Shown here: piece after piece, positions 1,213 through 45,137 of the stretch | Layout of the letters: every line of letters starts with the position of its first letter | How positions within the stretch are numbered: position 1 is the first letter of the stretch | DNA from: Pocillopora damicornis | Taxonomy: Eukaryota | Direction: 5' to 3' | Length of the DNA stretch: 64,000 nt | NCBI RefSeq assembly: GCF_003704095.1 | Contig: NW_020844818.1 | Location: forward strand, 496,001-560,000 | Notes under the pieces: model-generated | Databases searched by the model: none | What the model saw: the letters and a program-made list of their open reading frames with translations, nothing else | What the model was told of the DNA's origin: nothing | Position numbers and translations under genes: made by a program

Positions 1213-4200
1213 TTATCTCTGGCCTACTTCTGGTGTCTTGTAAACTGGTGCATCTGATTTGGGTAATGGAGGATTTCCCAGGATGATGTCAGCTGCCTTC
1301 TCTGCAACCATAACAGTTGGTCCATTGAGATTTCCACTAACAATACTTGGCATGATTGATGCATCAACAACTCTCAAATTCTCCACTCCAAACACCTCTG
1401 TTTTGTTGTTGACAACGGCCATTGGGTCATCTTCAGAGCCCATTTTGCAGGTGCATGATGGGTGATAAGCAGTGTCAGCATTCTGTCGTACCCAAGCATC
1501 AATTTCTTCATCAGTTTGGACATTGTCACCTTAAGGGTTAAAATTAAAATATTATTTGTTGCAGAGCATGTTCAATTTGTATCCTATGTTCTATGTACAA
1601 TGATATATAACAGAAAATAATTTGTTTCCTCTATTGATAGATGTTTAAATTTTTTTGTACTGTACCTGGCTGTAGTTCTTTTCCACGAAATGGATCAAAA
1701 GCTTTTTGGCTAAATACCTCACGCGTAAGTTTAATACTATCTCTTAACTCCACTCTATCCTCTTCAGTAGACAGGTAGTTGGGTTGGATGATTGGATGGT
1801 CATAGGGACTGGTTGACTTGATCTTCACATACCCACGACTTGTTGCCCTCATGGAGCCAACATGGACCTTAAAAAGAACAAATACATTTTACAACTTGTG
1901 TCATGCGAAATATAGAAACATGAAGGAAATGTTTAAAATTGAACATAAAAAGGAACATACACTACACATGGTGGCAGACTTTCATCTGTCACTTACTTGA
2001 AAAGCTTCTTTTTCTACTGTCACTCTACCATGATCTTTAAATGCAGAGGGTAGAAAGTGGTACTGGATATTTGGATGTGACATTCCCTCCCTGCTGCGAA
2101 TGAAGCCACCAGCCTCTAGATGTGCAGTGGCACATGGTCCTGTCCGAGTGAGGAACCATCTGACACCTATTGGAACCATGTTCCACCATTTGAGAGAGCG
2201 GTACAAACTTAAAGGTTGTGTACATTCCTGAAACAAGATTACAGAAGAGAAGCAAAATCTATATAAGGTTACTAGACAAAGCTTCCTCCTCATGGTGTCA
2301 CTGGATGTCTGAGAGCTGTAAGTTTTTCCAAAACTCTGGGGTGCCCAGCTCTTCTAAACTTCCATTAAAGAAAATTTCAACAATTTGCTAAAAGAAAAAG
2401 TAAGTTGCTAGACTTCTGCTAGAGCCTAAGAGAGGCTTGGTGCTCATTAAAATTTTGGATCAATATCAGTATCTGGGCAACTGCCCACCTACCCCTCCCT
2501 TAAGTTGTTGTCAATTGACTGTTGTTGGGTTAGGGGAGGGGTAGGTGGGTAGTTGCCCAGATACTGATATTGATCCAAAATTTTCTTCCTAGAGGCTGAG
2601 GTGAGCACTTGATTGAATGAATGCACTATGTCATCACCAATTGTTCCTCACCACCTCACGGTCAACTTTCTACATGTAGGATAGGTGGAGAATAATTTAC
2701 AAACCTGGTGGAAATACATCTCCAAATGATCTTGAAAGTTTTGCCCTACACCAGGAAGGTGAACATTCACAGGAATACCAAGCTTTTTTAAATCATCTGC
2801 ATTTCCTATACCTGACAGATTTAGGATCTGAGGTGTATTAATTGCACCAGAGGTTAAGATAACTCCCTTTCTGGCCTGGGCACATTTCACATGACTGCCC
2901 TGGTGGTAGACAACACCTGATGCACGATTCTTTTCAAATACTAATCTAGTTATCAGTGTTCTTGTCTCTGTGCGAAGGTTTTTACGCCTCAGTGCAGGCC
3001 TCAAGTAGGCATTCGCTGTATTCCACCGGAATCCTTTATGAATTGTCATGTCCATCCATCCAAACCCTTCCTGTTGGTAGCCATTCATGTCATCTGTGAA
3101 GGGATAGCCAGCTTCAACACCTGCATCGATAAATGCTTGGTACAAAGGGTTGTTTGATTTACCACGGGATACATGAAGAGGTCCACCACCCCCCCTGTAA
3201 TCATCTGAACCTAAAAAAGAAAATGCAAGTATTGTTTGCTTGTCAACAGTATGACCTCTGCAACAGCTTCGCATAGTATCAAATTCAACAAGAAACATGT
3301 CTCTTGTAGACGACTTAAAAGCCTTTTGAAAATTTTAACACCATACATGTATTTCCTTGAAAGTTCCCTAGTGCTTTTTTAAAATTTTGGCCTACAGGAA
3401 GAGCACTCAGTGGAAGGAGGGTGCTCAACCAAGTGGGGTGCTTATTAGGAAACTATTAACCTGTACTGATCCTGCTGAAGTTGAGGCTTAAAAAGTTATT
3501 TAAAAACAGGCAATAGAAAAAGGTTTTCCTTGAATCTCTACTATCTGAGAAAATAAGGGAGGAAATGGGGATGGCAATTAATTGAAAGGGGCTCCTCTTC
3601 CATATTATAAGCTAGGGGGGGTAGGTGCTTGTTTGGAGGGCACTTATTAGAGTGTGGACATCCCAGTATAAGTAAACTCTATGTGAAAAGGACTTTTTAC
3701 ACATTCCCATTTCTTCTGTGTCAGGTCAATCTTTAGCGCTACAACATAGGGATTTGACATTGATATGTAAATAGCAATTCTCTCTTAGTTGCTCCTAGGA
3801 GTAAAAGGGCTAACAATTCCTTATTATAGAATTGTGGACTTTTGTTAGCTTACCTAGTTCATGAGTCTGAGATTTCCTGAAGTATGGCAAACAATCTGCA
3901 TATGACCATCCTTCTGCACCTTCCTTCTCCCAGCGATCATAATCATAAGCATGGCCTCTGATGTACACCATTGCATTAAGGGATGAGGATCCACCCCATA
4001 CCCTCCCTCTGGGTTGATAGATCCGCCTGTATGGGTAACAGGGTAACCAATTTCACAAAATTTTACACAACAGATACACATATTTTAGAAAAAAAGAAAA
4101 TTTAAATACCAATTTACCTATTATCCATAAACTCTTGAGGTTCTGTTTCATAATACCAATTATATCTATTGTCGCAAAGATTATAAATAAGAGCAGCTGG

Positions 4201-5190
4201 CATGTGGATCTTCCACGTCCAATCTTTTGGTCCGGCTTCAAGAAGAAGAACTTTGTTTTCACCACTAGCTGATAGACGATTGGCAAGAACGCAACCAGCC
4301 GATCCAGCTCCACAAATAACGTAGTCATGAGATGAGGAATATCTTGTGATACCAGTCCCAGTTAGGAAACATTTTTGCTGTACCATTGGTCTATGGACTT
4401 AAGGATAAAATAATGAAAACCATACATTGAGATAAGTCAAAGATACCCATGATAATTATCAATATCTACTTAACCATTTCACTTCCAAGATCCAATTCCC
4501 TATATATTGCTTATAGTTGTGGTTTTGAGAATTTAATGTTAATAAAGCAATATCCCTGTGCTGATATTTTCTAGCTTTTTGTTGCCTTACTGTTTACAAA
4601 TGTATGGATATCAAGGAGAAATTCCTTGTTGGTCATTCCTGGGTGTAAACAAGTTGAGAAATAGATTCCATGTTGCTGTACACAGATGATGGCAAAATGT
4701 GGTGAGAACAAAAAAGTGGTGCACAAGTCCACTTCCGTTATCATTATGGAAGAGATGTATACAGAATAGAATCAAAATGTTATCAAAAAGGAAAATGTTT
4801 TCAATGGTGACTTCAATGATGTATGCAGCTGTCATCCAAAAGATGACTTATCAAACTGGGTGTATAATTCAGTGCATTATATAATGCAGCCGTTACTCTG
4901 TAGACATCACCTGTAGTAGTGTAATGTGACAGCAATCAACATCTTCACCCATAACATTGCATGAGCTGAGCCCTAACAACTGTTACAGGTTATGATCCTT
5001 ATTGACAGCCTTGCATATTGCTTAATAAATCAATGTCCATCAGTAGGAGTTGTGAATGGTCACAGTGGCAATAAAATATGGGAACAAAATTAAAGAGCAA
5101 GTTAATATTCAGACACATACCTTTTATGAAATGAAATGAAGGTGCAAGGTTTCTATAGAAACATCTTTTAAGCATCAAGAAAGACGCCAT
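1213..5190 (-). CDS. CHDH: Choline dehydrogenase, mitochondrial (GMC oxidoreductase), canonical copy
   Basis: Exons 5190-5121, 4397-4118, 4026-3854, 3210-2705, 2227-1997, 1867-1666, 1529-1213, all GT-AG and in phase. Basic N-terminal presequence [16 protein letters not shown] motif [55 protein letters not shown]. Confidence 0.93.
2451..2582. mobile_element. Palindromic hairpin MITE in a CHDH intron
   Basis: aattttggatcaatatcagtatctgggcaact...agttgcccagatactgatattgatccaaaatt: near-perfect inverted arms of ~50 bp. Confidence 0.85.
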
Positions 5191-7641: not shown

Positions 7642-10600
7642 ATGGCTTCTTGGGCGAAGGTCAAAACACTGTTTTTCACGAGGCCATTTCTCATACTCTG
7701 TAAGACGAATCATAAGCCTCAACAATCTTTGCAGTTGATTTTTGTAATATTGTGCTTATCTCGAAGCAATCAAGCTTAATTCAAGTAACCTTACTCATTT
7801 TTGGTTATTTTCAGTCGAACACGTTAGCTTCCAGCGACGATGTTTTCAGTCCACTGTAAAGTTTTCTTCATCTTACGACTATGTCATCTGTGGAGCTGGA
7901 TCTGCAGGGTGTGTCCTTACCGATCGTCTGTCGGCCAGTGGTGAAAACAGAGTTCTAATTCTTGAGGCAGGACCAAAAGATTGGACATGGAAGATCCACA
8001 TACCAGCTGCTGTCAAGTATAATCTTTGGAATGACAAATACAACTGGTATTACGAAACGGAACCACAAGAGTTTACGAATAACAGGTAATACAGTTTTGG
8101 AGTGTTTTAAGCACCAAGCTTAGTCAAACATAAAACTATTGAAGGACAATAACAAAGATAAGTCATAAGCTGGTGTTCGTAAACTTCCCCCCCTCCACCT
8201 GTGCCGTCAAAAAAAGTGATATAAAATCATAAAACAATAAAGCAAGTCCCTGCCTCAAACAACTAACACGCTACAGGTATAGAGCCCCATACTGGAAAAT
8301 CACTCCCACCTTCCTGCAAATTGCTGCCCAATGAAACAAAATTTAGAAAAATAAAAGGATATTTTGCTTGCTCGTTGTCCACCAGCATTTGAGATTGAAG
8401 TAGTCGAAACGAAGTTTCAAGGTTTTATGTTTCACTCATAAGATACCAATTTCCTTCCATACAGGCGGATCTATCAACCCAGGGGGAGGGTATGGGGCGG
8501 ATCTTCGTCTCTAAATGCAATGGTGTACATCAGAGGTCATGCGTATGATTATGATCGCTGGGAGAAGGAAGGTGCAGAAGGATGGTCATATGCAGATTGT
8601 TTGCCATACTTCAGGAAATCTCAGACCCATGAACTGGGTAGGTGTTCACTTCATTTTTCGACTTCCACTGTATATTTTTATTCTTGGAGCGCCACATCCC
8701 TTTTATCCTGGTAGCGCGCGTCATGACCAACCGTAAAGACCTAACATCGGACAAACAGGGATTAAAAGTCTCTATTTTCTAAGTCTCAGTAAGGCACCAC
8801 AGACGTTTCCTTATTGAAGCTGGGATACTGCGATATTCTCGTTTTCTTTAGATGATGATTTGCAAAAGCTTCGTATTCCTGTGATGACTCGTCCTTCCGG
8901 TTTCGTTTGCAATCTTGAAGATCTTTTGCGCAATTTTTTTTATAGTCTTGTCGCGAGAGATAAAAGCATTCTAGGCGATGTAAAACCTATTCCGTGAGGG
9001 ACAAAAGTTCTTTATTTACTAACACCGTTACCTGATACCCCTAATAGGTAAAGGAGGTTGTTGTTACGCATGCTGCTGTTGTTTTTGTTTCAGAGGTCAT
9101 GTAATGGACAAGTTAACAATTTGATCATTCTTGCTTGTAGGCCCAGATGATTACCGAGGAGGCGATGGACCGCTCCATGTATCCTGTGGTAAGTCAAACG
9201 GTAACCCTTTATACCAAGCATTTATTGATGCTGGTGTCCAAGCTGGTTATCCCTTCACAGATGACATGAATGGCTACCAACAGGAAGGGTTTGGTTGGAT
9301 GGACAAGACGATCCATAAGGGAGTACGATGGAATACAGCAAATGCCTACCTCAGACCTGCACATAAGCGCAAGAATCTTCAAACACAAACAAGGGCCTTG
9401 ACCTTGAGAATTTTGTTTGAGAACCACCGTGCTGTAGGAGTGGAGTATCAGTTGGGCAATGAAATAAAACGTGCTGGGGCCAGAAAGGGAGTTATCATAG
9501 CTGCTGGAGCCATTAACACACCACAGTTACTGAATTTGTCAGGCATTGGGAACGCAGTTGATTTGGAAAAGCTTGGTATTCCTGTGAAGGTTCATCTTCC
9601 CGGTGTTGGTTACAATCTTCAGGATCATATGTCTGTGGCTTTTATGCAGGTATGTAGTATTTATCAAGGTATTCCGGAGAGTGCTATGCAATCTTAAGTT
9701 ATCACACCACTGCTCTCTTGTTTCAGGAGTGTACTCAGCCCCTGACGCTTTACCGTACTCTGAAGTGGTGGAACATGATTCCAGTAGGAGTGAAATGGTT
9801 CCTCACAAGGACTGGACCATGTGCAACAGCACACAAGGAGGCAGGTGGCTTTATTCGCAGCAAGGAGGACATATCGCATCCTGACATCCAGTTTCAGTTT
9901 GTGCCTCTGGGGTACAAAGATGACGGTAAAGTGATATTCCAGAGGGATGCCTTCATGGTGGGTGGAAGATAAGCTCTTAGGATATCATGTAAATTTTCAG
10001 GCGTATTTCCTATAACCCTTTAAATCCTAAGGGTGACTGGCTTTCACATGATTTCTCCTAACGTAAAAGGAAATGATCATTAATTCCAGTAATTCCAGAA
10101 GTTTATGATTGTCAAACAAATTCTCCTTGTCAACGCCCTAGGAAATATATAGAGAATAGTATGGAGAATATAGATACTGATGTAATGGTGTAAAGGGTTA
10201 AGCTGTTGTGTTGTGTTTTTGTCTATTTAACGTTTTGTCCATACTTAAGAGGAACTAACACAAGACTTTCGTGGCTGGCCACAAAACTTGGTTTTCTTTT
10301 GTTCATACTGAATATTAAACCAAGTAGAATTTATCCTTTCTTCATATTTATCTGGCTATGAGTAAAAAAACTTTCTCTTGGAGAAAATCTTGAGAAGAAG
10401 GAAATTACTTTGTCAGTGTTGCTACACTTCCTGATTTTCCGCCAATTTCAGTGCGGCACTATAATACATGGTAGTCTTTTTAAAAAATAATAGTTATGAA
10501 AACGTTCTGAACGCTTCTGTTGATCACGTTGTTTTATTTCCTTACGAGATTCACGTTGGCACCTTACGTGCTACAAGTCGTGGATATGTAAGACTGAAGT

Positions 10601-11403
10601 CCACAAATCCATGTGATCATCCCAGTATCAACCCGCGATATCTGTCCACTGAAGAAGATCGGGTGGAGCTAAGAGATGCTGTTAGACTTACCAGAGAAAT
10701 AATCAGCCAACGGTCTTTGAAGCCATTTTGTAGGAGGGAGTTAGAACCAGGTACTTACAGTGAAAAGATATGATAGGTATAAAATGCTTTGTTTTAGCAG
10801 ATATCTCAGCAGGTTTTAGGGTCTTACTTTCCATGAGAATTAACTAAAAAAATAAAAGAAGCAGACCACTACCACATCAAGGCACCTTTTAGACCACTTG
10901 CTCACTAGGCGATCCATGTGTGCATCCTTCGGTTTGTTACACTTTTGATTCCCTATTCCTTCTATAGACATTCTCCTTTGATCTCCTGTGACTGGCTGCT
11001 TGAAGTTTGTTCTTAATAAAAGTTTGTTTGTTGAGGTGTCTCGCACTTGTTGGTGTGAAATGCTAAATTACAGTATGTTTGTTTGTACGCTTACAAAGGT
11101 GACCATGTTCAGACAGATGAACAAATTGACGCCTGGATACGACAGAACGCCGACACTGTATATCACCCATCATGCACCTGTAAAATGGGTTCCGAAGATG
11201 ACCCAATGGCTGTTGTCAATAATAAAACGGAGGTATTCGGTGTGGAGAACCTAAGGATTGTCGACGCATCAATCATGCCGAGTGTTGTGAGTGGAAATAT
11301 CAATGGACCAGTGATAATGATCGCGGAAAAGGCTGCAGATATAATTTTAGGAAATCCCCCTCTTCCTAAATCGAGAGCACCAGTGTATAAAAAGCCAGAA
11401 TAA
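7642..11403 (+). CDS. Choline dehydrogenase-like GMC oxidoreductase, paralogue 2
   Basis: Exons 7642-7699 ([19 protein letters not shown], gtaaga donor), 7815-8085, 8465-8637, 9141-9649, 9727-9957, 10549-10750, 11099-11403. Intron positions match copy 1 and the nucleotide sequence is very similar. Motifs [23 protein letters not shown]. Confidence 0.88.
8725..8925 (+). pseudogene. Decayed duplicate of CHDH exon 4 inside intron 3 of paralogue 2
   Basis: 8854-8922 translates [23 protein letters not shown], matching [23 protein letters not shown] / [23 protein letters not shown]. Upstream [11 protein letters not shown] resembles [11 protein letters not shown]. Confidence 0.65.
10013..10201. mobile_element. 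TTAA-flanked (piggyBac-like) MITE
   Basis: taaccctttaa...taaagggttaa termini; internal motifs (atttctcct, aaattctccttgtca, gagaatagtatggagaat) shared with more than 15 copies in the window. Confidence 0.75.
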
Positions 11404-13128: not shown

Positions 13129-16100
13129 ATGAACAGGTTTTCCTTGGGGTTTGTTCAGAGCACTTATAAGGTATCCAGAAAAAAATTTACCTGGAAATTG
13201 ACTGGTTAGTTTGAAGCCAATTGAAATCTTATCGATATGGTTAATTTCCTTAAAGATAATCTTCAATGCAAAAATTACACTCCTCCCATCACACACCCTT
13301 ACCAATCAAACATGTAGAAGAGGGTGGATGGAGCCATCCCTGATTGACATGAGTTGACCCTATGTTAACACATGAAGGATTTGATGCACTACACAAGATA
13401 AGATGCATGTTACAGGTTGTGACATGGCATGGGGTATGGTCAGGAGGTAGCCAATTTGGATTGTTTCAGGTTTAAATGAATTGCACTTTCTCTGTGATAA
13501 CTGCATAAAGAAGTTCTAAGGCAAAATAAAGTTTTAGTACATTCATTAAGCTTAAAGAACCCACAATTAGAATATTTAATAAGGTGAGGATAACTTAATG
13601 TTCAGTAGTGAACTGTCAGGGAAATTTGGAAAATACTGCGGAGATAACTTGTGATGAGTGTAAGCCTAAGCATACAGTTGAATGAGCAAAAAATATGCCA
13701 TGGAAAGTAACCCTGCCAAACCATGTGGCCCCATGAGGTAAAGCGTACATTATCATGCAGTGAAATTTATTGTTTCTTAATCTAACCAGGAGGCCAAGTG
13801 ATACAAAGATACTCTAAGTCAACCACATCATTTTCCTCCACCCATGAATACATTATCATTGGTGCGGGATCAGCTGGGTGTGTTCTGGCCAATCGGCTGT
13901 CAGCTAATCCAGATTTAAGGGTACTCCTCCTTGAAGCTGGACCATCAGATAACACATGGAAAATACAGATGCCAGCAGCCATGTCATATAACTTAGAATA
14001 TGACAGTCACAACTGGTTCTATACATCAGAGCCTCAGCAATATTTAAAAAATAGGTGTTAAAACAAATTTAATTTTCTTTTCATTTTCACACCATTGCTA
14101 ATCATAACAGTAATTCACTTGGTGATTCTGCAGTCCAACCAAGATCTGTTAACCCTTTAACTCCCAAGATCGGATAGTTCCTTCTCCCTCTAGCTGCTTG
14201 ACATTTCCTTCCAAAAAAGTTACGAGAATTTAATGTTAGATCAAGATGACAACCTATACCTGATAAGTTTGAGTATTCCTATTACCTGTTTGCTGGATAG
14301 TGTATGGATATTGTAGTGAGAAGTTACATTTTAATCACTTCTGGAAGTTAAAAGGGTCAAGGAAGTAGGATGGTAGGAGCCTGGGGAAAAATGGGGAATA
14401 TCATGGGAAAGATGGATGGGGGGGTGCAGTATTGAAATTGGACTTAAAGTGGGTTAACCAGCTCTTGACCCTCATGTAGATTTGGTTAATAAGCCACAAG
14501 TGTTTATGTTTCTAGTCTGAAATTATTTTTGGTTTTCAGATTTTCTCTTTGTCTCATGCCCAAAGCAAATGAATTTAACATATATTGTTGTCATACAGAA
14601 GAGCCTACAAACTTCAGTCTCTCTTTCTCCTTCCCTGCTCATTGGTTTATCATGTTTTGGATACCCAGATCTCAGCTGAATTGAAAATCTTGATTGAAAT
14701 CTCCCAATAGTCCAGTTTGCAGTTGTGTGCTTGGTCACCAAGCCTTTGAACAAGAGTGAGGCTAAGGGTGACCTTGTTACAATACAAATGGTGCTGCTTT
14801 TTAAAAGTAAATTTTTTTGTTATCGTGCTAGCTAGATACTGGTCTCTGTCACAACAAGGTCACCTTCAGCCTTGCTCCAAATCAAAGGCTTGGCAACTAA
14901 GTAAATAACTATAAAATGGCCTATTGGCTGTCAGAGGACTGGGCAAGTGATGAGTAGAGCAGTTGAACAGTGCGTTAATTTATGGGTTTGATTCTCACTG
15001 GAGGCTTTTTAGCTTTAACTCACACTCACCAGAGATTTATCAATCTATCAAAAAATAATTTTTAGTGAACTCAAATGGCTGCTCTTCATGTATATTGCAG
15101 GACTATTTACCATCCAAGAGGTCGTGTACTGGGCGGGTCCTCCTCAATAAATGCAATGATTTTTGCACGCGGACATGCGTTTGATTATGACAGATGGGAT
15201 AGGGAAGGTGCCACAGGATGGTCCTATGCAGACTGTTTGCCTTACTTCAAGAGGTTGGAAAGATACGAACATGGTATGTTTGTGTTTACCACACAAGGAC
15301 TTGATCACCTCTATGTCTTACCCAATAAGTTTTTTGCTTTTAGCAGACACTTTCATGTCAAGCGGTGTTTGTCTTCTCAAATACACTCTTTGACACAAGA
15401 TGAGAGAAAAAAATTAATCTATTTGGATTTTGTTGGTCTAAAGCAAATAAAATTATCTTAAATTATCTCAGTTACCCAGCAAAATGCACTTTTATTCGAT
15501 ACAAAGCACTCCTTTATAAACCATGCACTATCTAAACTAAGGCTGTTAGGTGGAGACAAGCAGTGTAACAGAAAAATGTTTTGCTCAAAAATGCAACACC
15601 AGTGACCACACCGAGGACTCGCACCGAACCTCTCAATCGGTTTTCCGACCCTTCTCCGGCCGCTGTGTCTACCTCATGGACATGACGCGAGTTTCTATGT
15701 TTAGGTGCTAGTCAGTATCGTGGAGGAAGTGGACCAATGCGAGTGTATCGTGGAACACATTCTAATCCTCTACACCACGTCTTCATCGCTGCGGGTGTAG
15801 AGGCCGGTCACCCATTTACAGATGACTTCAACGGTTATCAACAGGAAGGAGTTGGCTCACTGGATCGTACTATACACGAAGGGAAGAGATGGAGTGCCGC
15901 ATCCGCTTATTTGAAGCCAGCTCTTCCTCGGAATAACTTAACGACCGAGACCAGAGCACTGGCAAACAGAGTGTTGTTTGAAAACGGTAAAGCTATCGGA
16001 GTAGAATATCGGGTTGGGGATTCAGTGAAACGAGCACGCGCCTCTAAAGAAGTCATCCTTTCTGGTGGAGTAGTTAATTCTCCACAGTTACTTATGCTGT

Positions 16101-16322
16101 CTGGGATTGGGGATGAAACAGAGCTGAAGTTGCTGGGAATACCTATGGTGGCAAAGTTACCAGGAGTGGGAAAAAATCTGCAAGATCACGTCCAAGTGTA
16201 TGTCCAATATGTAAGTAATTAGCACCAGATAACCTACATGATGTAGAGATCTTGAATGTATTTTAGGAATGTAGAGCATTGCACCATTCACTGGGAATTT
16301 CAGGCCTTAAGTCGTTCAAAGT

Positions 16323-16367
<45 letters not shown>

Positions 16368-23222: not shown

Positions 23223-23355
23223 AACCCCCTATGAAAGGGTCTACAATGCTTGTATCAAAATATAGTTGACAAGTGTTTGATCATTTATCCACATAAAAAT
23301 ACATTGTGCAAAGTAACTTAGTTACATGTCACTGAATGTGACCAAAATTAGGGGT

Positions 23356-26009: not shown

Positions 26010-26734
26010 AATTTTTGGTGTCAACAGTAGACAGCTTTCACTAACAAGTCAAGAAATATGGTCGCTTGTGCTACACTAGGCGGCCAATTAAGGAGCGACT
26101 TTCGGAAGCCAAGCCTCCGCATTCTAAGCGTAATTTAAAGTCCAAAGCCACAGGGGATACAAAAGTAAACAGTACAATTATTCCCCACCGGGTAAGGGTG
26201 AAAGGCAGACTACTTCAATAGCATTCTAAATTATGGACAGGGAAACCCTTTTTTATTACCTGTTCTAAATTTCCAAAAAGTTTCACGAGTGAGTGTCGTT
26301 TAGTCAACAGGGCCTTCATTACGTACCTTGAGTAGCGCGCAAAGCGCATCACCCTCGCGTGACCCTCAAGACCAGCAGTGAGATGGCTGTCCTCAGATTG
26401 GACCAAAATGGTTAAAAAAAAAAATTTATTTATCAGAGATCTCTCGATATTCCTAGCAAAAGATACAGTTGGGTCTAAATATCGAATTTTAATCGTGACT
26501 ATAAATCATAATAGGCGAGAACAAGTAAAAAAAAATGTCCTCTCTAACAGGAGCCCATTACCTCCTGTCTCTACTAAAGAAACCAATTTTTTAACTCCAG
26601 TCATTTTATCAGTCATTAATACAAAAATGAAGAAGAGAGAAAATTTCTATCAACGTAACAATCACAGATAAATCAATTGGTCAATTAACAGCCTGTGCCA
26701 ACGATATAAACACTAGCCAATCAGAAAATCCATT

Positions 26735-27253
26735 TCATTGTGTCCTTGTTAACGCCCCAGCCCCGCCTCCAAATCCGTATCCCTTGGGGCCATAATTTTT
26801 ACCATAACAGCTCTTGCAGTAGATATCATCTGAAAAAATAACGACAAGTAAGATGACAAAGGAAAACGGAGTGAGACCAAAGCAACAACAACTACAAAAA
26901 TTACCAGTGCCCTAAGACAAATCCAAGGTTTTTCTTAAGCTACAGCTATGACTAAGTGTCATCCATCAGCAGCCTGGTGTCAAGAGATATTCTCTCGGTG
27001 TATCATATCCATTTTAACTGGTCGGCGTCCTAACACATTTGGGGAAACGAAAGGATTGAATCTTTGGTGTTATCACGTTTTACTTACCGTCGTGCATGGT
27101 CAGAGTAGTACTGTCCAAGCCTTTTTTGCAATCCGTACACGTGAAGCAGCTCTTGTGCCACGGTTTGCCGTTTGAGTCTTTTTTCTCTTCGGCTTGGTAA
27201 ACGGACTTTGCACATCTCTGGCATTTCTTTTGAGGTGCTGGAGTAAAAGGCAT
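26735..27253 (-). CDS. Single-LIM muscle LIM protein-like (CSRP/Mlp60A-like), 86 aa
   Basis: Exons 27253-27088 and 26829-26735 give [86 protein letters not shown]. Possible 5'UTR exon ending at the gtaggt donor near 28605. Confidence 0.92.

Positions 27254-29330: not shown

Positions 29331-29331
<1 letters not shown>

Positions 29332-29379
<48 letters not shown>
29332..29379. repeat. Poly-G tract
   Basis: About 48 consecutive G; the length may be a sequencing artefact. Confidence 0.9.
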
Positions 29380-29380
<1 letters not shown>

Positions 29381-32150: not shown

Positions 32151-35100
32151 TTAAACAACTATTCTTGCTTCATCATGATGACTTTGGCCAGAGGAAAAGA
32201 TCTCTGCATTCTTCGGTTGTACTTGAATGATGACAATTATCTTTTGAAACTCTCGGAAGTATGTCAGAAAGTAGAGAAGGAAACATATGCTCATCAACCA
32301 TTCACTGAAAGTACTCGCCAGATGGGCATTGTATCCCTGTTATGGTTAAAAAAAAAATGCAATCACAATAAGTTAGAGCAAGAAATATGATTAAAGGGGG
32401 TAAGTTTCTAGAGAAACTGTGGTGTTGTGTTGCTGGGAGAGTACAACAGGGTAATTTGGTTCTATTAACTTAGTTAATAACGTAAATTGGCCACTGTAAA
32501 CATTTTAAAAAGTTGAAGTTTCTAGTGTTAGCTCTTTGTCAGGGCAAATGATGAAGTATCAGATTAAAAAACAAACAAAAAAAAAGGCACAAGAGACATA
32601 TTTGGATCTAGGAGGATCTCTACAATAAAATCATTGCCAAATGAGCCACAAAATTATACAATCAGAGAATTTCCTCACACATCAATCAACTTGATAGCAG
32701 AATAGGGAACTTCAATTACAAAATCTAGGAAACATCTAAGGCTAAACTGGAGAATGATACTCCTCAATCAGTAAGAACTGGTATTCCCTGTGCACGCAAA
32801 GGATGGGCAAGTGATTTTTCTGAGCACTTACATCATCTGTTTTGTTCCACTTGAGTTCAGCAGCCATGTCACTCATGTTCTTATGCTGTTCTTTGTATGC
32901 TACTGAGGCGGCACCTCCAGCCGCTAGTGCTATTTTCAAAATTAATTTAACATCAAGGACAAAATCAGCAATAATTTGTCTTGGCATCAGATCTTAAGTT
33001 TCCTAAAACCCTCTGCTTAACTCATGAAGCTACAAAAATTGGAATTACTAATACTAACTTGATCTGCATATTGGAGCAAGGATAAAAACAGCTTCTATAC
33101 TTGAAGACTGCGTGCATGAAAGACTAGCATAGCTTCAAGAGCTTAACCCAGTAACTGTGCCATACAACAGAAAGGAATATTGCCACTCGTTGTAGATAAT
33201 ATGGGAATGATAATGGGAACAATGGGCATTTAGCAGTGGACATCCCACGAGGTAGCTCTTCTTGTCCACTGTTTCCAGGTTGAATTGGAATGTGAAAAGT
33301 TAGTATTTCTGGAGGGAAGAAACCCAGAAGACTAGGAGAGTAAACCTCAGAGCAAGGATAAGAACCAACAAAAAACTCAACCCACGTATGGCAACAGGTC
33401 TGGGAATCAACCCAAGGCCAGAGCAGTGGGAGTTGAGTGGTATCACCACAGCACCATCCTGCTCTCCTCATTTTCTAGTCTACAATTTAGTTGAACTTTT
33501 ATGACATTTTGCTGGTACTTATAAAAACTCAATGGCCTTTTAAGGTAATATGTATTATGATCCTGACCAACTGTCTAAGCTATGTTTCTGATCTAGTATA
33601 CAGTGCACTGTGATTATGAACTCACACTGCACATTCCATCTCACTGACATGTGGATAGCAAAGTTTGATTTAACTGAAAGAGGATACTGATGATAAAGAA
33701 CACAGATATGAGAGCTGAAAGAATAAATCTGGTGCAAGAGCTAAGGGCAGAGCTTGTTGCCTGATTTCGCATTAAATGGGAAATAAAGGCCTGCATCCAG
33801 CAGTACAGTGTCCCTAAACCAAACACCATGATAGCGCCTGTCAAATGTGTTGGCAAAGAATTTGTCTCCTATAAAAGAACAATAGCAATCTATATCATTA
33901 CACTGTCAGTAATTGAAAGAGTGTTGGGAAGATTGAGAAATGCCTGCCTTCATAAACATCAGGCCCCCTTTTTTGTGACAATTATTTTATAGTTTTTATC
34001 TTTTTGAAGTATCCAAGCAGGCCTGGCCCATAACCAGTCCAACTTCTTACAATACAGACCAGTGTCTGGAGTTTTTTTCTCTTCCATTCCAGCCAAGAGG
34101 AAAAAAGCAAACCAGCAGAAAAAATAAACAAGTTACTAACCAATCTAGTTCAATCTGTATGTAAAAAAACAAAAAAAACCAAAAAAAAAAAAACCAACTG
34201 TGCCTTCAAGCCTTGGACTGTACTCAAGATATCAGCCACAGTTTTTTTCCCCTATCAACTTTCCAGATGGTGTCTTGAACTATTAAAATACCTCTCTCTT
34301 GCCAAGAGGAGGAAGTGATATTCATTTTATTTAAAACCAGATGAATTGAACTTAGGTGTTGATCAATTTGAAGCTTCAACACCCCTCCCCCCCCCTCCCT
34401 TCTTCAAGTGCTCCCACCCAAGTGCTGAATTAGCAACTGTGCAATTCTTGTGGACCTCTTCTTCTGAGCCATCTGCTCACAAAAGTGAACTTTCTACATT
34501 TATACACTTCCACATTAGAGGATAAAACACATTCATTTAGTGGGAAAGCAGTTCTGGTTCAAATTCTCCACCACCCTGGAAAGGTTCAAATTCCCCACCC
34601 CCCTCCAAGGGGGGAGGGGTACAAGGGATGTTGAAGCTAGATTGCTTTTTTTTATGTTGATAATGGTAATTGTCATGGGGAAAATTTCTCAACACATCAC
34701 TTGTTTTTACTACAATTTTCTTCAAAAAAGAACAAGTTAAAAAATAAAACAGTTCCCCAAATGTGTTAAACAAAAATTGGATTTCACAAAAATAATGGGG
34801 TTTTGCCCACAATAACACGCCCTTGATAGCAACTTAATAATTTCAGTACTCAGATCTTGCCTAACTTACTTGAAAATTTGCAACCATGGAGAGACCCAAG
34901 CATGTAAAGGCTGCTATCCACAAGGACCAATAGTTAAGATTCGAGATTATCGGCATGTCTGTGACATTGGATTCTCTTACATGTCTGTAGTGGATATACA
35001 TTACTACAAATGCTGCAAATTAATCAAACAATAATCTAAAACATTTATGTCAAAGATGGCTCTTGCCAATATTGGGATTTGAAAAATCTGACCTGAAAGT

Positions 35101-41101: not shown

Positions 41102-44100
41102 TTAAGAGGATGATGAAGATGACGAGTCTGATGGATATAAGGTATTTAGAAGCTCATCCACATTGTTTAAAACAATGTCAGCCTCCTTTTCTAGAAATTT
41201 CTGGTTGCCAGCCCCACTAAGAACACCTATTGTTAGACCCAGCCCAGCAGAACGACCCATTGAGGTGTCGGCAATAGTGTCACCAACAATAACAGTTTGA
41301 GTTGGACAAACATTTAACTCTTCACAAATGCCCAAGGCAGTTTCAGGATTGGGTTTTGGTTTGATGTCTGTATCATCCCCACAAACAATTTTGTCAATCA
41401 TGCTCATGAGGCCTAACCTGTCAAGAGCTGACAGAGTGCCTTCTCGACTGTCAGTTGTACAGACTGCAGTCTTAACACCCTTTGCCCTCAGAGTTTCAAA
41501 AATTGCTGGGAGGTCACCCAGAGGCTCCAGGGTATCATGCCCACCACTGTCAAAATCTTTACAGCAGTTGCTAACCAGCTTCTGTGCTTTTGCTCTATCT
41601 AAACCACTCTTAATTAACACTGTGACAAATGCTTGTCTGATTTCAGCAACAGTCGCATGGGCTAGCAAGCCTCCATCAGAGTAGATGCGCTTCTTAGGAC
41701 AATAACCCACTTCTTCATACATTTTATCAGCCAGATCAAGACCAGTTGCCTCTTCCAGTTCCTGCACATGACTCTCCATCCAAGGAATCCACACATTATT
41801 CAAATCTATCAGAGTACCATCTTTGTCAAATATCACAAGGGAAGGGTCCATTGAGTCTGGGAAAAATGATCCACTGCTTTGGCCATCCCCAGCAAGGGAT
41901 GAGAAACCTGCTGAACAGCCACCACGTCGAGGGAGCTGAGGTCTAGCCCAGGGGGCATTTCCTACAGGAGCCAAGTGATATTAGCAACACAAAAGGGGGG
42001 AAGGGGGAGACAGTGACTAGCAAACCTAAGATGTCAATCATATCTTGGTAAGTGTAGGCAATGTGATCATTTCTGAAAGATTCTTGAGAGATTAGGATTT
42101 CTTTGCATGTAGCAAAGTAGCTAAATTGCTTTTACAACATGGAACCATAATTTGCTTACACAAACAACACTTCACAACTACTTTATTAAAAAAAAACGAA
42201 CAAACCAAAGTGAAGCCTGTTCTCAAGCTAACTTTTGCCAAACTTTAAATAACATTGTAACTTTTCTCAGTTTCTTTTTGTTCTTAAATAATAATAAAAA
42301 ATCTTCTGGTAGCTTTTTGCAAGAAAACAGTCTCAAGGGAATCTGTTTTTGGTGGAGTGTTTGTCTAGTTTGAAGATTGTGACTTAAGACATGCCCTCTT
42401 TCAAAGACAGGAAAGTTACACCAGAGGTAGAAACAATTATTGAAAACTTTTGACAAGGATTATAAAATTTCTAAAAACCAAGATATAGCTTACTGTCATC
42501 TTGAGGAATCATGCCACTATCAATCAAGAATATGGCAGTTCCTACAATTAATGTAATCCTTTGGATACCTGTTATTCTAGGACCCTGGTTCCAGAGGTCT
42601 TTGTCAATAAATGCTTTTTTCACTGCCGATGTTCGAATGGTTTGCTCTGGGGCAGCTGGAGGGCCATAAAGCTTGTTGTAATCAAACCCATCAGCACTTC
42701 GCCTGTTGACAATTACATATCAGCACCACATAACATCAGGCCTTTGACAAGCAAAGCTTGTAGGCCTCTGCACACAACTACAGTAAACTAAAGCTTTAAT
42801 ATAACAACCTCACTTGCTGTATTGAACACTATTTAGAAACACCACATGACTACTATCGCTTTCAAGATAATGTGACATTTAAATGCCAAATGTAAATTCT
42901 CATGCTAAAATCTTTGAAACTTTAGAACAAGCATCACTTTAAATTCTGAGAAGGAACATTGAAATGTCTCTCTTTTCTTTTCTTTTTTTGGACTGTGAGG
43001 AGGTGGTTATATCAGAAGACTGATCATTATAACACTTACCTTATAATTCAATTTATACAAGAATTCATTTACAATTCATTTAGTGCTACCAAGGTTAGAT
43101 TACAACAGTTCATACTTTAAAACCAAGTTACACAGCCAGAAACTTAAAACTCAAAACATTGTCACACAGTTGAGAAAGACCACCTGTTTTTGTTTTTTTA
43201 CAACTTTTGAATGACTTTGTATCATGGCTAAACATTCCAATATTTTGGGAAAACAATATCAGAAATTGTTAGGTTTGGATTCAGCCTTGCATCCAAACAA
43301 ATGGCCCTTGTATTAAAATAATGATAATACACAAATAGAAAGCTAAAAAAACCAACATAACAAAATTGAAAACAGCTTAACCTTTCAGAATCTACCATTT
43401 CTGCTTTGAGAAACATATTTAATCTGTTCCAGTGAAAGTAGAGATCAAAGTTCTGAATTTCTTCTCAAATTCCACAAAAATTTAAAAAATTGATTGAAAT
43501 TAAAAGTGGCCACTAATGCTGTGTGTCGATCTACTACCAATTAACTTCTTTTTTTTAAGCCACTTCAACTTAAATCTTTTTTTTAAGCCACTTCAACTTA
43601 AATCTTTTTTTTAAGCCACTTCAACTTAAACTTTTTCCAGTGTTGAGACTAGGCTGCACAAATTTGCAAACTATATGCTTGACAATCCACAAAATCTTGT
43701 GATAGCACTCATTTGGTTTCACATTGTGGGCCAATTGTGTCCTATCAATTCTTCTGAAAAATTTAGTTTTCTTTCTAACTAAAGAGTTGTTTGATATTTG
43801 TCATATCAAGTTTCTTTTCATCATGAAACCAAAAAAAAATTTTCAAAGGATTTTGTATGCCCAGAACAACTATACAACATTTGTGCCAGTCGTCTGGGCC
43901 TACAGAGAACTCTGATTTTCTCCACTGAGGATCTTGACCAGGAAGGAATTGAAACATACCTTGGTTTACCTAGGATAAAGTTCCAAAGTGAAAATGTTTG
44001 TGAGAGAATGTCATTGATGGAACCAATCATTTAAACAGAGTTTAAAAGAAATTCAGTCAGTTGCAATGTGTCTTGTGCCCAATTGTTTACTTTGCCCTAG

Positions 44101-45137
44101 AGTCATTTCAGACATTGGCTAGTTTTATGTAAGTAAAAGTGTTACTGCACTAGAAATAAAAGTTGTCAGAAGTTATCGTCAAAGTCACTATAAGTAGTTG
44201 TATCCAAATTTGTTACATTGTAAAAAGATGTTTGAAGATTAACATGAATAATTAACTAAAGGTGATTAATTCTTAATTACATGTACTTGTAACTATGTTC
44301 AAAATTAAGTGGTCCAGAGTTCACACTGGATAAAATATGTAAAGCTGGATGATCTCAAGGTAATCAATCAATAAAAATGCAAAGTTCCCCTCTCCCCTTT
44401 TGTGTCTCATTAGGGAAAAAAGGAAAAAAAGGAAAAAACAAAAAAGAACAAAAACAAGACCACCATGTCACACTGATCATTCAAGGCACAATCCTCGTGA
44501 CTTCAACTTTGGGAAGGCCTTGATGTGCCCCTTTACACTGACCCTAAGAAGCAGAATAACGAAGAGCCAACACTGCTCAATTACTGTATATTATCAAACA
44601 AATCAACATTGAGCATTAACTATAACTTACTGAGAAGCTTGTGCCACAAGAAAAACCTGTCCTTCATTGTCTATACCAAATCCAAGTCTCTCATTCCACA
44701 CCCCAAGAGCTGATATCCCTGCAAAATTCAAGAACAACATTCATCACAAGGAAAGATGCAAATTTATTAAACAGATAGAACAAACTTTTCTTATGAAACT
44801 CAATGGGAGGATTACAATTTTCCAGCTTGGAGTCTTAATTCAACCTCAAGGTTTCCACTTTAAAATTTAGAGATTCCATAACGTTTCCATCAGAAGTTGC
44901 TTTGTAAATACCGTAAAAATATAATTTCCTGATGTACTCCTTGCTTTGTTGTTTACAGAAACTCAAATTCCTTCTAATGTGTAGGCTTCTCGCAAAACAT
45001 ACTCCAACAATATCTCTTGCCACACTTTAAACTCTGTTCTTACCTTTAAAGGAAGTTTGACTCTTAAAATGGATCTGTCTTACACATCTTCTTTGAAGTA
45101 GCCCAAAAACTTTCCTTGCCTGTCTATTTAATGCCAT
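41102..45137 (-). CDS. HAD-superfamily phosphatase (C1-cap, phosphoglycolate phosphatase/PpaX-like) with a predicted mitochondrial presequence
   Basis: Exons 45137-45044 (MALNRQARKVFGLLQRRCVRQIHFKSQTSFK), microexon 43969-43960, 42702-42569, 41961-41102. HAD motifs FDKDGTL, CTTD, KPKPNP, GDTIAD; poly-Ser tail. The HAD exon is certain; the upstream exons are inferred from splice sites and phase. Confidence 0.8.
43549..43636. repeat. 29-bp tandem repeat, three copies
   Basis: ttttttttaagccacttcaacttaaa(tc) repeated three times. Confidence 0.9.

What the first reader, a model, noticed from the sequence alone, without database searches (positions are those of the whole stretch)
1213..45137. Candidate mitochondrial phosphocholine-to-betaine module: three CHDH-like genes linked to a mitochondrial HAD phosphatase
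Seen: three CHDH-like genes and, ~23 kb away, a HAD phosphatase; all four begin with basic N-termini with almost no acidic residues, as mitochondrial presequences do. Recollection, to be verified: this HAD subfamily (LVIFDKDGTL..W..W, LEEATGLDL, VCGDD..PKP, GDT..D..MG..AGLG.T.GVLSG) occurs fused to the N-terminus of choline dehydrogenase in some other invertebrates. Inference: here the fusion is split but still linked, and the HAD may dephosphorylate phosphocholine or a related ester to supply the dehydrogenases for betaine-type osmolyte synthesis. LIM and DRAM genes lie in between, so linkage alone is weak evidence.
Basis: partly seen in the sequence, partly recalled or inferred. Interest (0 to 1): 0.75.

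Follow-up and report, generated by a model that had tools for sequence, protein, structure and literature searches.

The report
Coral choline dehydrogenases linked to partner phosphatase
A stony-coral genome keeps its only three choline-dehydrogenase genes about 23 kb from an uncharacterised phosphatase gene whose relatives are fused to choline dehydrogenase in many other animals, so the two enzymes probably work together.

Summary
The window, probably from the 234-Mb Pocillopora damicornis assembly, carries three intact multi-exon GMC/choline-dehydrogenase genes (A 1213-4386 minus strand, B 7642-11403 plus, C 13129-18404 plus). A four-exon HAD_2 phosphatase gene (41102-45137, minus, 391 aa) lies 22.7 kb from C. 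LIM and DRAM genes and three N gaps lie between them.

HAD-CHDH fusion proteins occur in molluscs, nemerteans, an annelid, a flatworm, amphioxus, a crinoid, an acoel and one protist record: 23 of 23 and 43 of 44 long hits in two searches. The coral HAD falls in the same strongly supported clade (100/99) as the fused HAD domains. In this assembly all 6 GMC matches and the single HAD match lie inside this window.

HAD, B and C have clear presequence-like N-termini, and C's is confirmed by RNA contigs. A's is weak.

Phosphocholine as the substrate, mitochondrial localisation, synteny in other cnidarians and continuity across the gaps are untested. Seven full-text searches, six of them on this question, found no paper describing the fusion.

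My reading is a split but linked form of a widespread, uncharacterised HAD-CHDH pair. A functional partnership is likely; phosphocholine phosphatase activity is only plausible.

The parts
1213..4386 (-). CHDH-like gene A, 565 aa. Coding exons: 4386-4118, 4026-3854, 3210-2705, 2227-1997, 1867-1666, 1529-1213.
   Evidence: Pfam GMC_oxred_N on 2648-3298. tblastn matches to P0224 and P0200. Splice refinement and frame check: all introns GT-AG, no internal stop. The best NCBIfam family for 3 of 3 exons scanned is choline dehydrogenase NF002550. A keeps the His of the IQ.HF.P motif that B and C lack. The ATG at 4386 sits in the first homologous exon; an upstream exon is not excluded.
7642..11403 (+). 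CHDH-like gene B, 582 aa, 78% identical to A. Exons: 7642-7699 (predicted start exon), 7815-8085, 8465-8637, 9141-9649, 9727-9957, 10549-10750, 11099-11403.
   Evidence: The start exon was found by eye (ATG, GT donor, phase 1, matching the acceptor at 7814/7815). There is no RNA evidence for it.
13129..18404 (+). CHDH-like gene C, 584 aa, 53-57% identical to A and B. Coding exons: 13129-13204, 13790-14054, 15101-15273, 15705-16210, 16692-16922, 17118-17319, 18103-18404.
   Evidence: All six joints appear in RNA-run contigs with GT..AG ends. They were seen in 4/4, 1/4, 4/4, 3/4, 4/4 and 4/4 runs. One 2091-nt contig is listed over five of its exons. Frame check. Pfam and NCBIfam matches.
21211..22944 (.). 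Three assembly gaps (21211-21310, 21422-22037, 22845-22944) with two short sequence islands between them. The region is repeat-rich and non-coding with respect to the four genes.
   Evidence: Island 22038-22844 and the right flank 22945-23224 share an 82%-alike repeat. Parts of the island recur on other contigs at 97-98% identity.
23356..27253 (-). LIM-domain gene (CSRP-like by eye). Only two ORF pieces were examined.
   Evidence: Pfam LIM 2.1e-12 on 27083-27253. The glycine-rich ORF 23356-23535 had no Pfam match.
33644..33856 (-). One exon of a DRAM/Frag1-family membrane protein gene.
   Evidence: Pfam Frag1 1.4e-8. A merged HAD+Frag1 gene model exists in the sea anemone Actinostola (P0037), which suggests that this neighbour is conserved.
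41102..45137 (-). HAD_2 phosphatase gene, 391 aa. Exons: 45137-45044 (presequence-like start), 44718-44631, 42702-42569, 41961-41102 (the whole HAD domain).
   Evidence: Pfam match. tblastn with the 391-aa Stylophora-cluster protein P0002 covers all four exons. All introns are GT-AG, there is no internal stop, and the model is 89% identical and collinear with P0002 and P0262. Motif residues D9, K10, D11, G12, T13, T132, D134, K166, G190, D191 and D195 are invariant in 40 relatives. AlphaFold2 mean pLDDT is 92.8.
48334..49860 (-). Single-exon histidine acid phosphatase gene (MINPP1-like), directly upstream of the HAD gene.
   Evidence: Pfam His_Phos_2 3.6e-40. Stylophora PFX30835.1 (P0263) is a merged His_Phos_2+HAD gene model.

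Best explanation
The window holds a two-part enzyme system that many other animals encode as a single polypeptide. One part is a C1-capped HAD phosphomonoesterase with a presequence-like N-terminus. The other is choline dehydrogenase, present here as three paralogues. A is the canonical copy, B is a recent copy of A, and C is older and expressed.

Shown:
- The genes are intact.
- The HAD belongs to the clade whose members are fused N-terminally to CHDH in at least seven animal phyla.
- In this assembly the partners are the only genes of their kinds and lie within 45 kb of each other.

Inferred:
- Both proteins are imported into mitochondria.
- The HAD removes phosphate from a choline ester, most likely phosphocholine.
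- The choline released is oxidised by CHDH to betaine aldehyde on the way to glycine betaine.
- The linkage is a remnant of an old adjacency, which became a fusion in other lineages.
For: Fusions.
- 2 of the 10 longest HAD hits Pfam-scanned are HAD+GMC_N+GMC_C. One is RefSeq XP_075262799.1, 'choline dehydrogenase, mitochondrial-like', from Convolutriloba.
- 23 of 23 hits and 43 of 44 hits among long relatives carry both HAD and GMC families. They include Mollusca, Tubulanus, Lineus, Owenia, Macrostomum, Branchiostoma, Antedon and an EukProt record 'Rmarinus'.
- Several lie on intron-free contigs of 2.9-4.7 kb, for example P0304 (1191 aa on 4340 nt, 83 member sequences). These must be transcripts.
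- All 14 complete fusion N-termini printed look like presequences.

Shared clade. In a careful tree of 61 HAD domains, the cnidarian HADs sit in a 48-row clade with 100/99 support. That clade holds every fused HAD domain plus the nematode and copepod stand-alone forms. The nearest non-cnidarian row is the fused 'Rmarinus' domain (84/88).

Catalytic motifs are intact. The fold is a C1-capped HAD phosphatase.

Linkage. 6 of 6 GMC matches and the single HAD match of the assembly lie in the window.

CHDH identity. The best NCBIfam family for 9 of 9 exons scanned is choline dehydrogenase. The CHDH part of P0224 matches the solved BetA structure 9lq0 at 2e-175.

Gene C is spliced and present in poly(A) RNA runs.

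Precedents. Pseudomonas PchP is made during growth on choline or betaine (PMC3170909, abstract as shown in the search listing). The solved bifunctional HAD phosphatase/dehydrogenase MtlD appears among both sequence and fold matches.
Against: - No substrate evidence exists. The HAD is far below every NCBIfam equivalog cut-off: PpaX 65 vs 218 bits, phosphoglycolate phosphatase 60 vs 180, phosphonatase 43 vs 220. The top 50 fold neighbours are generic.
- Phosphocholine is a cytosolic metabolite as far as I know, and no import route into mitochondria is known to me.
- The two loci are separated by two unrelated genes and three gaps, two of them 100 N long. I believe, from recall, that this length marks scaffold joins. 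The source assembly is a Chicago/HiRise scaffold set that may lack up to 14% of non-repetitive content (PMC6208414, passages). So 'only copies' is a lower bound and the distance is an estimate.
- Gene A's N-terminus is weakly basic. B's start exon is only predicted.
- B and C carry Gln where A, BetA and the fusions have His in the IQ.HF.P motif. They may not use choline.
- Among 80 bacterial loci with the nearest prokaryotic HAD relatives, only 1 has a GMC gene nearby. The usual neighbour there is an ABC importer.
Confidence: 0.45

Rival explanations
1. The HAD and CHDH are true partners, as the fusions show. However, the HAD works on something other than phosphocholine, such as another phosphorylated small molecule in mitochondria. 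Candidates are a sugar phosphate, a damaged-metabolite phosphate such as phosphoglycolate, phosphoethanolamine, or a flavin nucleotide needed by the FAD enzyme.
For: - Source databases name relatives 'PpaX-like' or 'phosphoglycolate phosphatase', and the best weak NCBIfam matches are to those families.
- Fold neighbours are sugar-phosphate and sialate-phosphate phosphatases.
- Bacterial relatives sit beside an ABC importer with an SBP_bac_6 binding protein, not beside bet genes.
- From my own knowledge, a plant HAD FMN hydrolase is fused to riboflavin kinase. I did not check this here.
Against: - None of those families' cut-offs is approached.
- A fusion to choline dehydrogenase specifically, kept across at least seven phyla, is most simply explained by consecutive steps on one substrate skeleton.
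- The database names are automatic.
Confidence: 0.3
2. In this coral the linkage means nothing for function. HAD and the CHDH cluster are merely leftovers of an old neighbourhood, or are neighbours by chance. They are regulated and used independently, even if they are fused elsewhere.
For: - Two unrelated genes (LIM, DRAM) lie between them.
- B and C point the opposite way from the HAD gene.
- The HAD gene's conserved neighbours seen elsewhere are DRAM (Actinostola P0037) and MINPP1 (Stylophora P0263), not CHDH.
- Nematodes, copepods and other cnidarians have stand-alone HADs.
Against: - The chance of a given single-copy gene landing this close is about 2e-4 (my arithmetic).
- The pairing was predicted independently by the fusions.
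Confidence: 0.15
3. The linkage is an assembly artefact. The scaffold join across the gaps at 21.2-22.9 kb is wrong, and the CHDH cluster and the HAD gene are not neighbours.
For: - There are three gaps in 1.7 kb of repeat-rich sequence. Parts of the island between them recur on contigs C3362 and C1527 at 97-98% identity.
- The likely source assembly was scaffolded with Chicago/HiRise and is incomplete (PMC6208414, passages).
Against: - The same repeat stands on both sides of the third gap.
- From my own knowledge, proximity-ligation joins over such short ranges are usually right.
- There is no positive sign of a misjoin.
Confidence: 0.1

Closest known systems
HAD-CHDH fusion proteins of other animals. 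Examples: Convolutriloba macropyga XP_075262799.1 (1013 aa), Mercenaria mercenaria LOC123548319 (1195 aa), and the Branchiostoma belcheri and Antedon mediterranea records. They are annotated only as 'choline dehydrogenase' or 'uncharacterized'.
   Same: They share the HAD clade (100/99 support). They share the BetA-like GMC dehydrogenase (61% identity to the largest exon of A, B and C). They also begin with a presequence-like N-terminus.
   Different: In the coral the two parts are separate genes 22.7 kb or more apart, each with its own start, and CHDH is triplicated. Lophotrochozoan fusions have two HAD domains. In the 5 molluscs checked only the first domain keeps the DKDGT motif.
Pseudomonas aeruginosa phosphorylcholine phosphatase PchP followed by BetA/BetB
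   Same: It has the same proposed logic: a HAD-superfamily phosphatase frees choline from phosphocholine, and a GMC choline dehydrogenase then oxidises it. PchP is made during growth on choline or betaine (PMC3170909, abstract as shown in the search listing; PMC4113454 seen in the listing only).
   Different: From recall, PchP is periplasmic and serves catabolism in a bacterium. It did not appear among the sequence matches or the top 50 fold matches, so no kinship beyond the superfamily is shown.
Plant glycine-betaine route: phosphoethanolamine methylation, then phosphocholine phosphatase, then choline oxidation
   Same: A phosphocholine phosphatase step precedes choline oxidation for osmolyte synthesis. 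This rests on my own knowledge; PMC5796140 and PMC5853852 were seen only in the search listing.
   Different: Plants oxidise choline with a Rieske monooxygenase in chloroplasts. From recall, the known plant phosphatases (PECP1/PS2) belong to another HAD family. Pfam Put_Phosphatase did not match here.
Bifunctional mannitol-1-phosphate dehydrogenase/phosphatase MtlD of Acinetobacter (PDB 7ocn and related entries)
   Same: A HAD phosphatase domain is joined to a dehydrogenase to make a compatible solute. Its HAD domain is a sequence match and a fold match to the coral HAD.
   Different: The order of reactions is reversed (dehydrogenase first, phosphatase second), the dehydrogenase fold differs, and the substrate is different.
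PHOSPHO1, the vertebrate phosphoethanolamine/phosphocholine phosphatase
   Same: It carries out the reaction proposed here (PMC9360546, abstract as shown in the search listing).
   Different: It belongs to a different HAD family and is not fused or linked to CHDH. No vertebrate protein appeared among the 120 listed relatives of the coral HAD.

Membership tests
HAD superfamily phosphatase, subfamily IA (C1 cap) | Motif I DxDG[T/V], with the nucleophile Asp and an Asp two residues later | tested here: met
   DKDGT is present. D9, K10, D11, G12 and T13 are invariant in 40 aligned relatives.
HAD superfamily phosphatase, subfamily IA (C1 cap) | Motif II Thr/Ser, motif III Lys and motif IV GDxxxD | tested here: met
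   T132, K166, G190, D191 and D195 are invariant. Assigning these residues to the motifs is from my own knowledge.
HAD superfamily phosphatase, subfamily IA (C1 cap) | Profile match above the curated cut-off, and a Rossmann-like core with a helical cap inserted after motif I | tested here: met
   HAD_2 scores 85 bits against a cut-off of 23.8. NCBIfam HAD-IA v1 scores 31.9 against 23.3. The model has mean pLDDT 92.8 with helices 17-96 after strand 5-8. The top PDB neighbours are C1-capped HAD phosphatases.
Phosphoglycolate phosphatase / PpaX (the names that source databases give to relatives) | Score above the NCBIfam equivalog cut-off | tested here: not met
   PpaX scores 65 against a cut-off of 218. 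PGP_bact scores 60.1 against 180.
Phosphonoacetaldehyde hydrolase (PhnX) and PhnX-like | Score above the NCBIfam cut-off | tested here: not met
   TIGR01422 scores 42.8 against 220. TIGR03351 scores 62.4 against 218.9. From recall, motif I here has Asp at the +2 position where PhnX has Ala.
PHOSPHO1/PECP1-type phosphocholine phosphatases | Pfam Put_Phosphatase profile match | tested here: not met
   It is not among the Pfam matches of the HAD ORF at E up to 0.01.
Clade of HAD domains that occur fused to choline dehydrogenase | Placement inside the clade in a phylogeny with outgroups | tested here: met
   The 48-row clade has 100/99 support. It holds the window's HAD, five other cnidarian HADs and all fused domains. 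The quick tree of 92 rows agrees but is less resolved.
Clade of HAD domains that occur fused to choline dehydrogenase | HAD and GMC domains on one polypeptide | tested here: not met
   The coral HAD gene ends with a stop at 41102. It is collinear with the 391-aa stand-alone Stylophora protein. The nearest GMC exon is 22.7 kb away.
Choline dehydrogenase (BetA/CHDH) within the GMC oxidoreductases | GMC_oxred_N and GMC_oxred_C profile matches | tested here: met
   One search gave matches on exon ORFs of all three genes (N domain), plus gene C's last exon (C domain). tblastn covers the whole CHDH part of P0224 for A, B and C.
Choline dehydrogenase (BetA/CHDH) within the GMC oxidoreductases | Whole-protein score above the NCBIfam NF002550 cut-off of 605 bits | tested here: inconclusive
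   Only single exons were scanned, because the joined model was not searched. NF002550 is the best family for 9 of 9 exons. The three exons scanned per gene sum to about 486 bits (A), 474 (B) and 443 (C). This is my own addition of the scores.
Choline dehydrogenase (BetA/CHDH) within the GMC oxidoreductases | Catalytic His and Asn in the C-terminal part, and the substrate-side His of the IQ.HF.P motif | tested here: inconclusive
   By eye, the YH(P/L) and SGN(L/I)N stretches are present in A, B and C. The His of IQ.HF.P is present in A, P0224, P0200 and BetA 9lq0 but is Gln in B and C. The functional labels for these residues are recalled, not tested.
Mitochondrial matrix-targeted proteins | N-terminal presequence: basic, hydroxylated, no acidic residues, amphipathic helix | tested here: inconclusive
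   Only composition and a simple hydrophobic-moment calculation were done. Net charge in the first 40 aa is HAD +8, C +8, B +5 and A +2. No dedicated predictor or experiment was available.

The most novel reading that the evidence does not exclude
This HAD clade is the missing animal phosphocholine phosphatase. Together with choline dehydrogenase it forms an ancient two-step unit. It appears fused in spiralians, deuterostome invertebrates, acoels and at least one protist record, and split but still linked in corals. The unit lets marine invertebrates make glycine betaine in mitochondria from de novo phosphocholine. On this reading the coral cluster would be a co-regulated osmolyte and stress locus.
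Probability: 0.3. Interest if true: 0.75.

Novelty: new variant of a known kind. Interest (0 to 1): 0.6.

Why it matters
Glycine betaine is a major osmolyte and stress protectant in corals and molluscs. Yet the step that supplies free choline to mitochondrial choline dehydrogenase in invertebrates has no assigned enzyme. A conserved fusion is one of the stronger purely genomic signs that two proteins act together.

Here that sign points to an uncharacterised HAD family that is missing from the vertebrate hits seen. If the family is a phosphocholine phosphatase, it would complete the route from de novo phosphocholine to betaine in animals. It would also explain the 1200-residue 'choline dehydrogenases' of molluscs and give coral stress biology a defined locus to follow. 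The claim is directly testable with one recombinant protein and a small substrate panel.

I found no paper on the fusion. Six full-text searches addressed it; a seventh was used only to identify the assembly.

Tried and rejected
Merged gene models served as a substitute. They show HAD next to DRAM (Actinostola) and next to MINPP1 (Stylophora), but say nothing about CHDH.

Substrate clues.
- NCBIfam, PDB by sequence, and an AlphaFold2 model with Foldseek against PDB placed the HAD only among generic C1-capped phosphatases.
- Phosphonatase was considered and rejected on score and, from recall, on the motif I Asp at the +2 position.

Bacterial context.
- 80 loci of the nearest prokaryotic relatives were examined, mostly Chloroflexota at 31-40% identity.
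- One of the 80 has a GMC gene next to the HAD: L051, an Acidiferrobacteraceae MAG, where the genes are divergent and no BetB is seen.
- The common neighbours are an ABC ATPase (46 of 80 loci), two permeases (40 and 36) and an SBP_bac_6 binding protein (25). Pfam was run on one representative of each cluster.
- These loci lie outside the eukaryotic clade, so I give them little weight.

Literature. Seven full-text searches were run; six addressed the fusion and one was used to identify the assembly. None returned a paper on a HAD-CHDH fusion. Papers read:
- PMC7240134, passages found by term. It mentions coral betA and codA homologues but neither a phosphatase nor phosphocholine.
- PMC11849188, passages. 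It gives no domain information for oyster CDH.
- PMC6208414, passages on assembly size and method.
Supplementary tables, such as Table S2 of PMC7240134, were not opened. They may list the coral CHDH genes.

Own-species protein. No database protein is identical to the window's HAD; the best is 92% over a part and 89% over the full length. Splicing of the HAD gene in this species therefore rests on homology, not on reads.

Gaps. Continuity across the gaps was probed only by repeat comparison beside the N runs.

Joined model. The joined spliced proteins were not sent to any search, family or fold tool. Pfam, NCBIfam, PDB and structure prediction used single exons or database proteins. As a result, the whole-protein cut-off for choline dehydrogenase could not be applied to A, B or C.

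The quick tree kept only every third unnamed representative (92 of 178 domain rows). The careful tree used 61 hand-picked rows.

Full report
WHAT IS THERE

The window is eukaryotic, with short exons and GT-AG introns. The HAD protein is 89-92% identical to proteins of Stylophora pistillata and 89% identical to a partial Orbicella protein. The assembly has 234,350,878 bases in 4393 contigs. This fits the 234-Mb Chicago/HiRise assembly of Pocillopora damicornis (PMC6208414, passages). The species name is my inference; no tool stated it.

Three GMC oxidoreductase genes occupy positions 1.2-18.4 kb.
- Pfam finds GMC_oxred_N or GMC_oxred_C on their exon ORFs.
- tblastn with two HAD-CHDH fusion proteins gives six collinear exon matches per gene, covering the whole dehydrogenase part.
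- A small splice-refinement script gave models with only GT-AG introns and no internal stop.
- Gene A is on the minus strand and encodes 565 aa. B is on the plus strand, 582 aa. C is on the plus strand, 584 aa.
- A and B are 78% identical and lie head to head. C is 53-57% identical to either.

For gene C all six joints were seen in contigs of RNA runs, including the joint 13204>13790 in 4 of 4 runs. That joint brings in a short start exon. One 2091-nt contig of a poly(A) library is listed over five of C's exons. B's start exon (7642-7699) was found by eye and has no RNA support. A's ATG at 4386 lies in the first homologous exon.

The best NCBIfam family for each of the 9 exons scanned is choline dehydrogenase. 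The joined spliced models were not sent to any search, family or fold tool, so the whole-protein cut-off could not be applied.

The HAD gene is on the minus strand and has four coding exons: 45137-45044, 44718-44631, 42702-42569 and 41961-41102. It encodes 391 aa. It is collinear with the 391-aa Stylophora protein at 89% identity, without the 10-nt microexon proposed in another note on this window.

The N-terminal ~145 residues, which lie ahead of the HAD domain, are 37-83% identical to the four cnidarian orthologues compared and have no Pfam match.

Several genes surround or separate the two loci.
- Between HAD and the CHDH cluster lie a DRAM/Frag1 gene and a LIM gene.
- Upstream of HAD lies a single-exon MINPP1-like histidine phosphatase gene.
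- Beyond that lies what looks by eye like an FKBP-TPR gene (not tested).

THE GAPS

The N runs are at 21211-21310, 21422-22037 and 22845-22944. They fall between the 3' end of C, where RNA contigs reach 18678, and the last LIM ORF (23356-23535). No exon of the four genes borders a gap, so reading frame is not in question.

What is in question is whether the two halves of the finding are truly neighbours.
- The region is repeat-rich.
- The 807-nt island and the right flank share an 82%-alike repeat, so the third gap sits inside one repeat array.
- Parts of the island recur on two other contigs at 97-98% identity.
- Nothing bears on the first two gaps.
- I used the one read-laying run on gene C, so continuity remains untested.

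THE RECOLLECTION ABOUT FUSIONS IS RIGHT AND UNDERSTATED

An exhaustive HMMER search with the coral HAD found 109 representatives at E up to 1e-30. Of the 10 longest among the 150 listed, 2 carry HAD plus GMC_oxred_N plus GMC_oxred_C. One is RefSeq XP_075262799.1, 'choline dehydrogenase, mitochondrial-like isoform X6', from the acoel Convolutriloba macropyga.

Two further searches used the HAD parts of fusion proteins as queries, so that long proteins were admitted.
- The first returned 23 of 23 hits with both domain types.
- The second returned 43 of 44.
- The named hits include many bivalves, gastropods and cephalopods.
- They also include two nemerteans, the annelid Owenia, the flatworm Macrostomum, amphioxus, the crinoid Antedon, and an EukProt record labelled 'Rmarinus'. 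I cannot name the organism behind 'Rmarinus' with certainty.

Several fusions stand on intron-free contigs of 2.9-4.7 kb, so they are real transcripts.

Lophotrochozoan proteins of about 1190 aa have the architecture HAD-HAD-CHDH.
- In the 5 molluscs checked only the first HAD keeps DKDGT.
- In the 2 nemerteans both do.
- In Owenia only the second does.
- The amphioxus, crinoid, acoel and 'Rmarinus' proteins have one HAD.
- All 14 complete N-termini printed look like presequences.

A careful tree of 61 HAD domains puts the window's HAD with five other cnidarian HADs (100/99). That group sits inside a 48-row clade (100/99) that also holds every fused domain, the nematode and copepod stand-alone proteins, and some unnamed ones. 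Oomycete and other sequences fall outside. Within the clade the backbone is unresolved. The nearest non-cnidarian row is the fused 'Rmarinus' domain (84/88, not starred). The earlier quick tree agrees.

LINKAGE

In the whole assembly, all 6 of 6 GMC_oxred_N matches and the only match to the HAD lie in this window. The tool states that such counts are lower bounds. [quoted passage not shown]

With that caveat, the chance that one given gene lies within 22.7 kb of the cluster is about 2e-4 (my arithmetic). The pairing was predicted by the fusions, not by the linkage, so this figure carries some weight.

On the minus strand HAD lies upstream of gene A, in the same order as in the fusions. However, B, C, LIM and DRAM lie between them.

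WHAT THE HAD IS

- All catalytic motif residues are invariant in 40 relatives.
- The AlphaFold2 model of the HAD exon is confident, with mean pLDDT 92.8.
- Its PDB neighbours are C1-capped HAD phosphatases: sialate-9-phosphate phosphatase, beta-phosphoglucomutase, phosphoglycolate phosphatases and the phosphatase domain of bifunctional MtlD.
- No NCBIfam equivalog cut-off is approached. The database names 'PpaX-like' and 'phosphoglycolate phosphatase' are therefore automatic labels.
- The nearest prokaryotic relatives are mostly Chloroflexota, next to an ABC importer. Only 1 of 80 sits beside a BetA-like gene.

So the chemistry, a phosphomonoesterase, is well supported, while the substrate is not.

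HOW IT MOST LIKELY WORKS

Shown: two intact gene sets. One encodes a HAD phosphatase whose relatives are fused N-terminally to choline dehydrogenase across much of the animal tree. The other encodes the coral's only detected GMC enzymes. They lie 23-45 kb apart.

Inferred: both products enter mitochondria. HAD, B and C have strongly basic, acid-free starts, while A's is weak. The HAD would hydrolyse a choline phosphate ester, most simply phosphocholine. CHDH would oxidise the freed choline to betaine aldehyde.

Precedents are the Pseudomonas PchP-BetA route and the plant phosphocholine phosphatase step. MtlD is a further example of a HAD phosphatase joined to a dehydrogenase for osmolyte synthesis.

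I rate a functional partnership at roughly three in four, and phosphocholine as the substrate at roughly one in three to two in five.

A is the most canonical paralogue. B and C have Gln where A, BetA 9lq0 and the fusions have His in the IQ.HF.P motif. That partly agrees with another first-stage note on this window. I did not map that note's 'Glu'. The Glu of the ..E.GGF stretch is kept in all three genes by eye.

DIRECTION OF EVOLUTION

The word 'split' assumes an ancestral fusion. In P0224 and P0200 the linker in front of the dehydrogenase is rich in Arg, Ser and Thr. It resembles the short presequence-like stretch in front of the coral CHDHs. This fits a fusion made by reading through from HAD into a neighbouring CHDH gene. 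The 'Rmarinus' fusion and the unresolved tree leave the other direction open.

NOVELTY

The fusion architecture is visible in public protein records but is annotated only as 'choline dehydrogenase' or 'uncharacterized'. Six full-text searches on this question found no paper that describes it or assigns a function to the HAD clade. The split, linked state in a coral is a new variant of a known kind of arrangement: a phosphatase coupled to choline oxidation.

Noticed in passing
window 14000-14970, 16150-16540, 17530-17720: Intronic stretches of gene C draw RNA-contig depths of hundreds to about 27,000, with many loose ends and non-GT-AG 'joints'. They look like copies of abundant transcribed repeats, not exons.
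   Followed up: no
window 12800-13204: The 2091-nt RNA contig of run X10 extends 416 nt upstream of 13789. Only about 85 nt of that lie in the start exon 13120-13204, and the record runs over the end of the laid stretch. Gene C therefore has further 5' exon(s) upstream of 12800, towards the 3' end of gene B (11403).
   Followed up: no
window 9727-9957 and 16692-16922: Paralogues B and C have Gln where A, bacterial BetA (PDB 9lq0) and the fusion proteins have His in the conserved IQ.HF.P stretch. The Glu of the nearby ..E.GGF stretch is kept in all three.
   Followed up: partly
window 43960-43969: Another first-stage note proposes a frame-essential 10-nt microexon here. The four-exon HAD model is in frame without it and is collinear with the 391-aa Stylophora protein. 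No reads were laid on this place.
   Followed up: partly
window 48334-49860 and 33644-33856: The HAD gene's neighbours appear conserved. Stylophora PFX30835.1 is a merged MINPP1+HAD gene model, and Actinostola QZH41_003043 is a merged HAD+DRAM model. Both match the gene order on the window's minus strand.
   Followed up: partly
window 41961-42702 and 44631-45044 (HAD residues about 30-145): About 110 residues lie between the presequence-like start and the HAD domain. Over the N-terminal 145 residues as a whole, identity to the four cnidarian orthologues compared is 37-83%. The region has no Pfam match and is absent from the nematode and acoel proteins seen.
   Followed up: no
proteins P0273, P0279, P0289, P0303, P0314, P0308, P0301, P0312, P0307: In the HAD-HAD-CHDH proteins the DKDGT nucleophile motif survives only in the first HAD of the molluscs checked, in both HADs of two nemerteans, and only in the second HAD of Owenia. 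One of the two domains is therefore probably inactive in some lineages.
   Followed up: partly
L051:8145-10711: In an Acidiferrobacteraceae MAG, a BetA-like GMC gene (51% identical to a mollusc CHDH part) lies 113 bp from a HAD relative and is transcribed divergently. A NUDIX gene lies behind it. This is 1 of the 80 bacterial loci examined.
   Followed up: partly
L001-L080 (mostly Chloroflexota): The nearest prokaryotic relatives of the HAD usually sit beside an ABC importer. Clusters were found in 46 of 80 loci (ATPase with TOBE_2), 40 and 36 (two permeases) and 25 (SBP_bac_6 binding protein). This hints at an imported organophosphate as substrate there.
   Followed up: partly
protein P0146: A 633-aa representative joins an MFS_1 transporter to a HAD of the outgroup clade. 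Its organism is unknown.
   Followed up: no
window 50243-58156: Plus-strand ORF pieces look by eye like an FKBP-type isomerase with TPR repeats. This was not tested with any profile.
   Followed up: no
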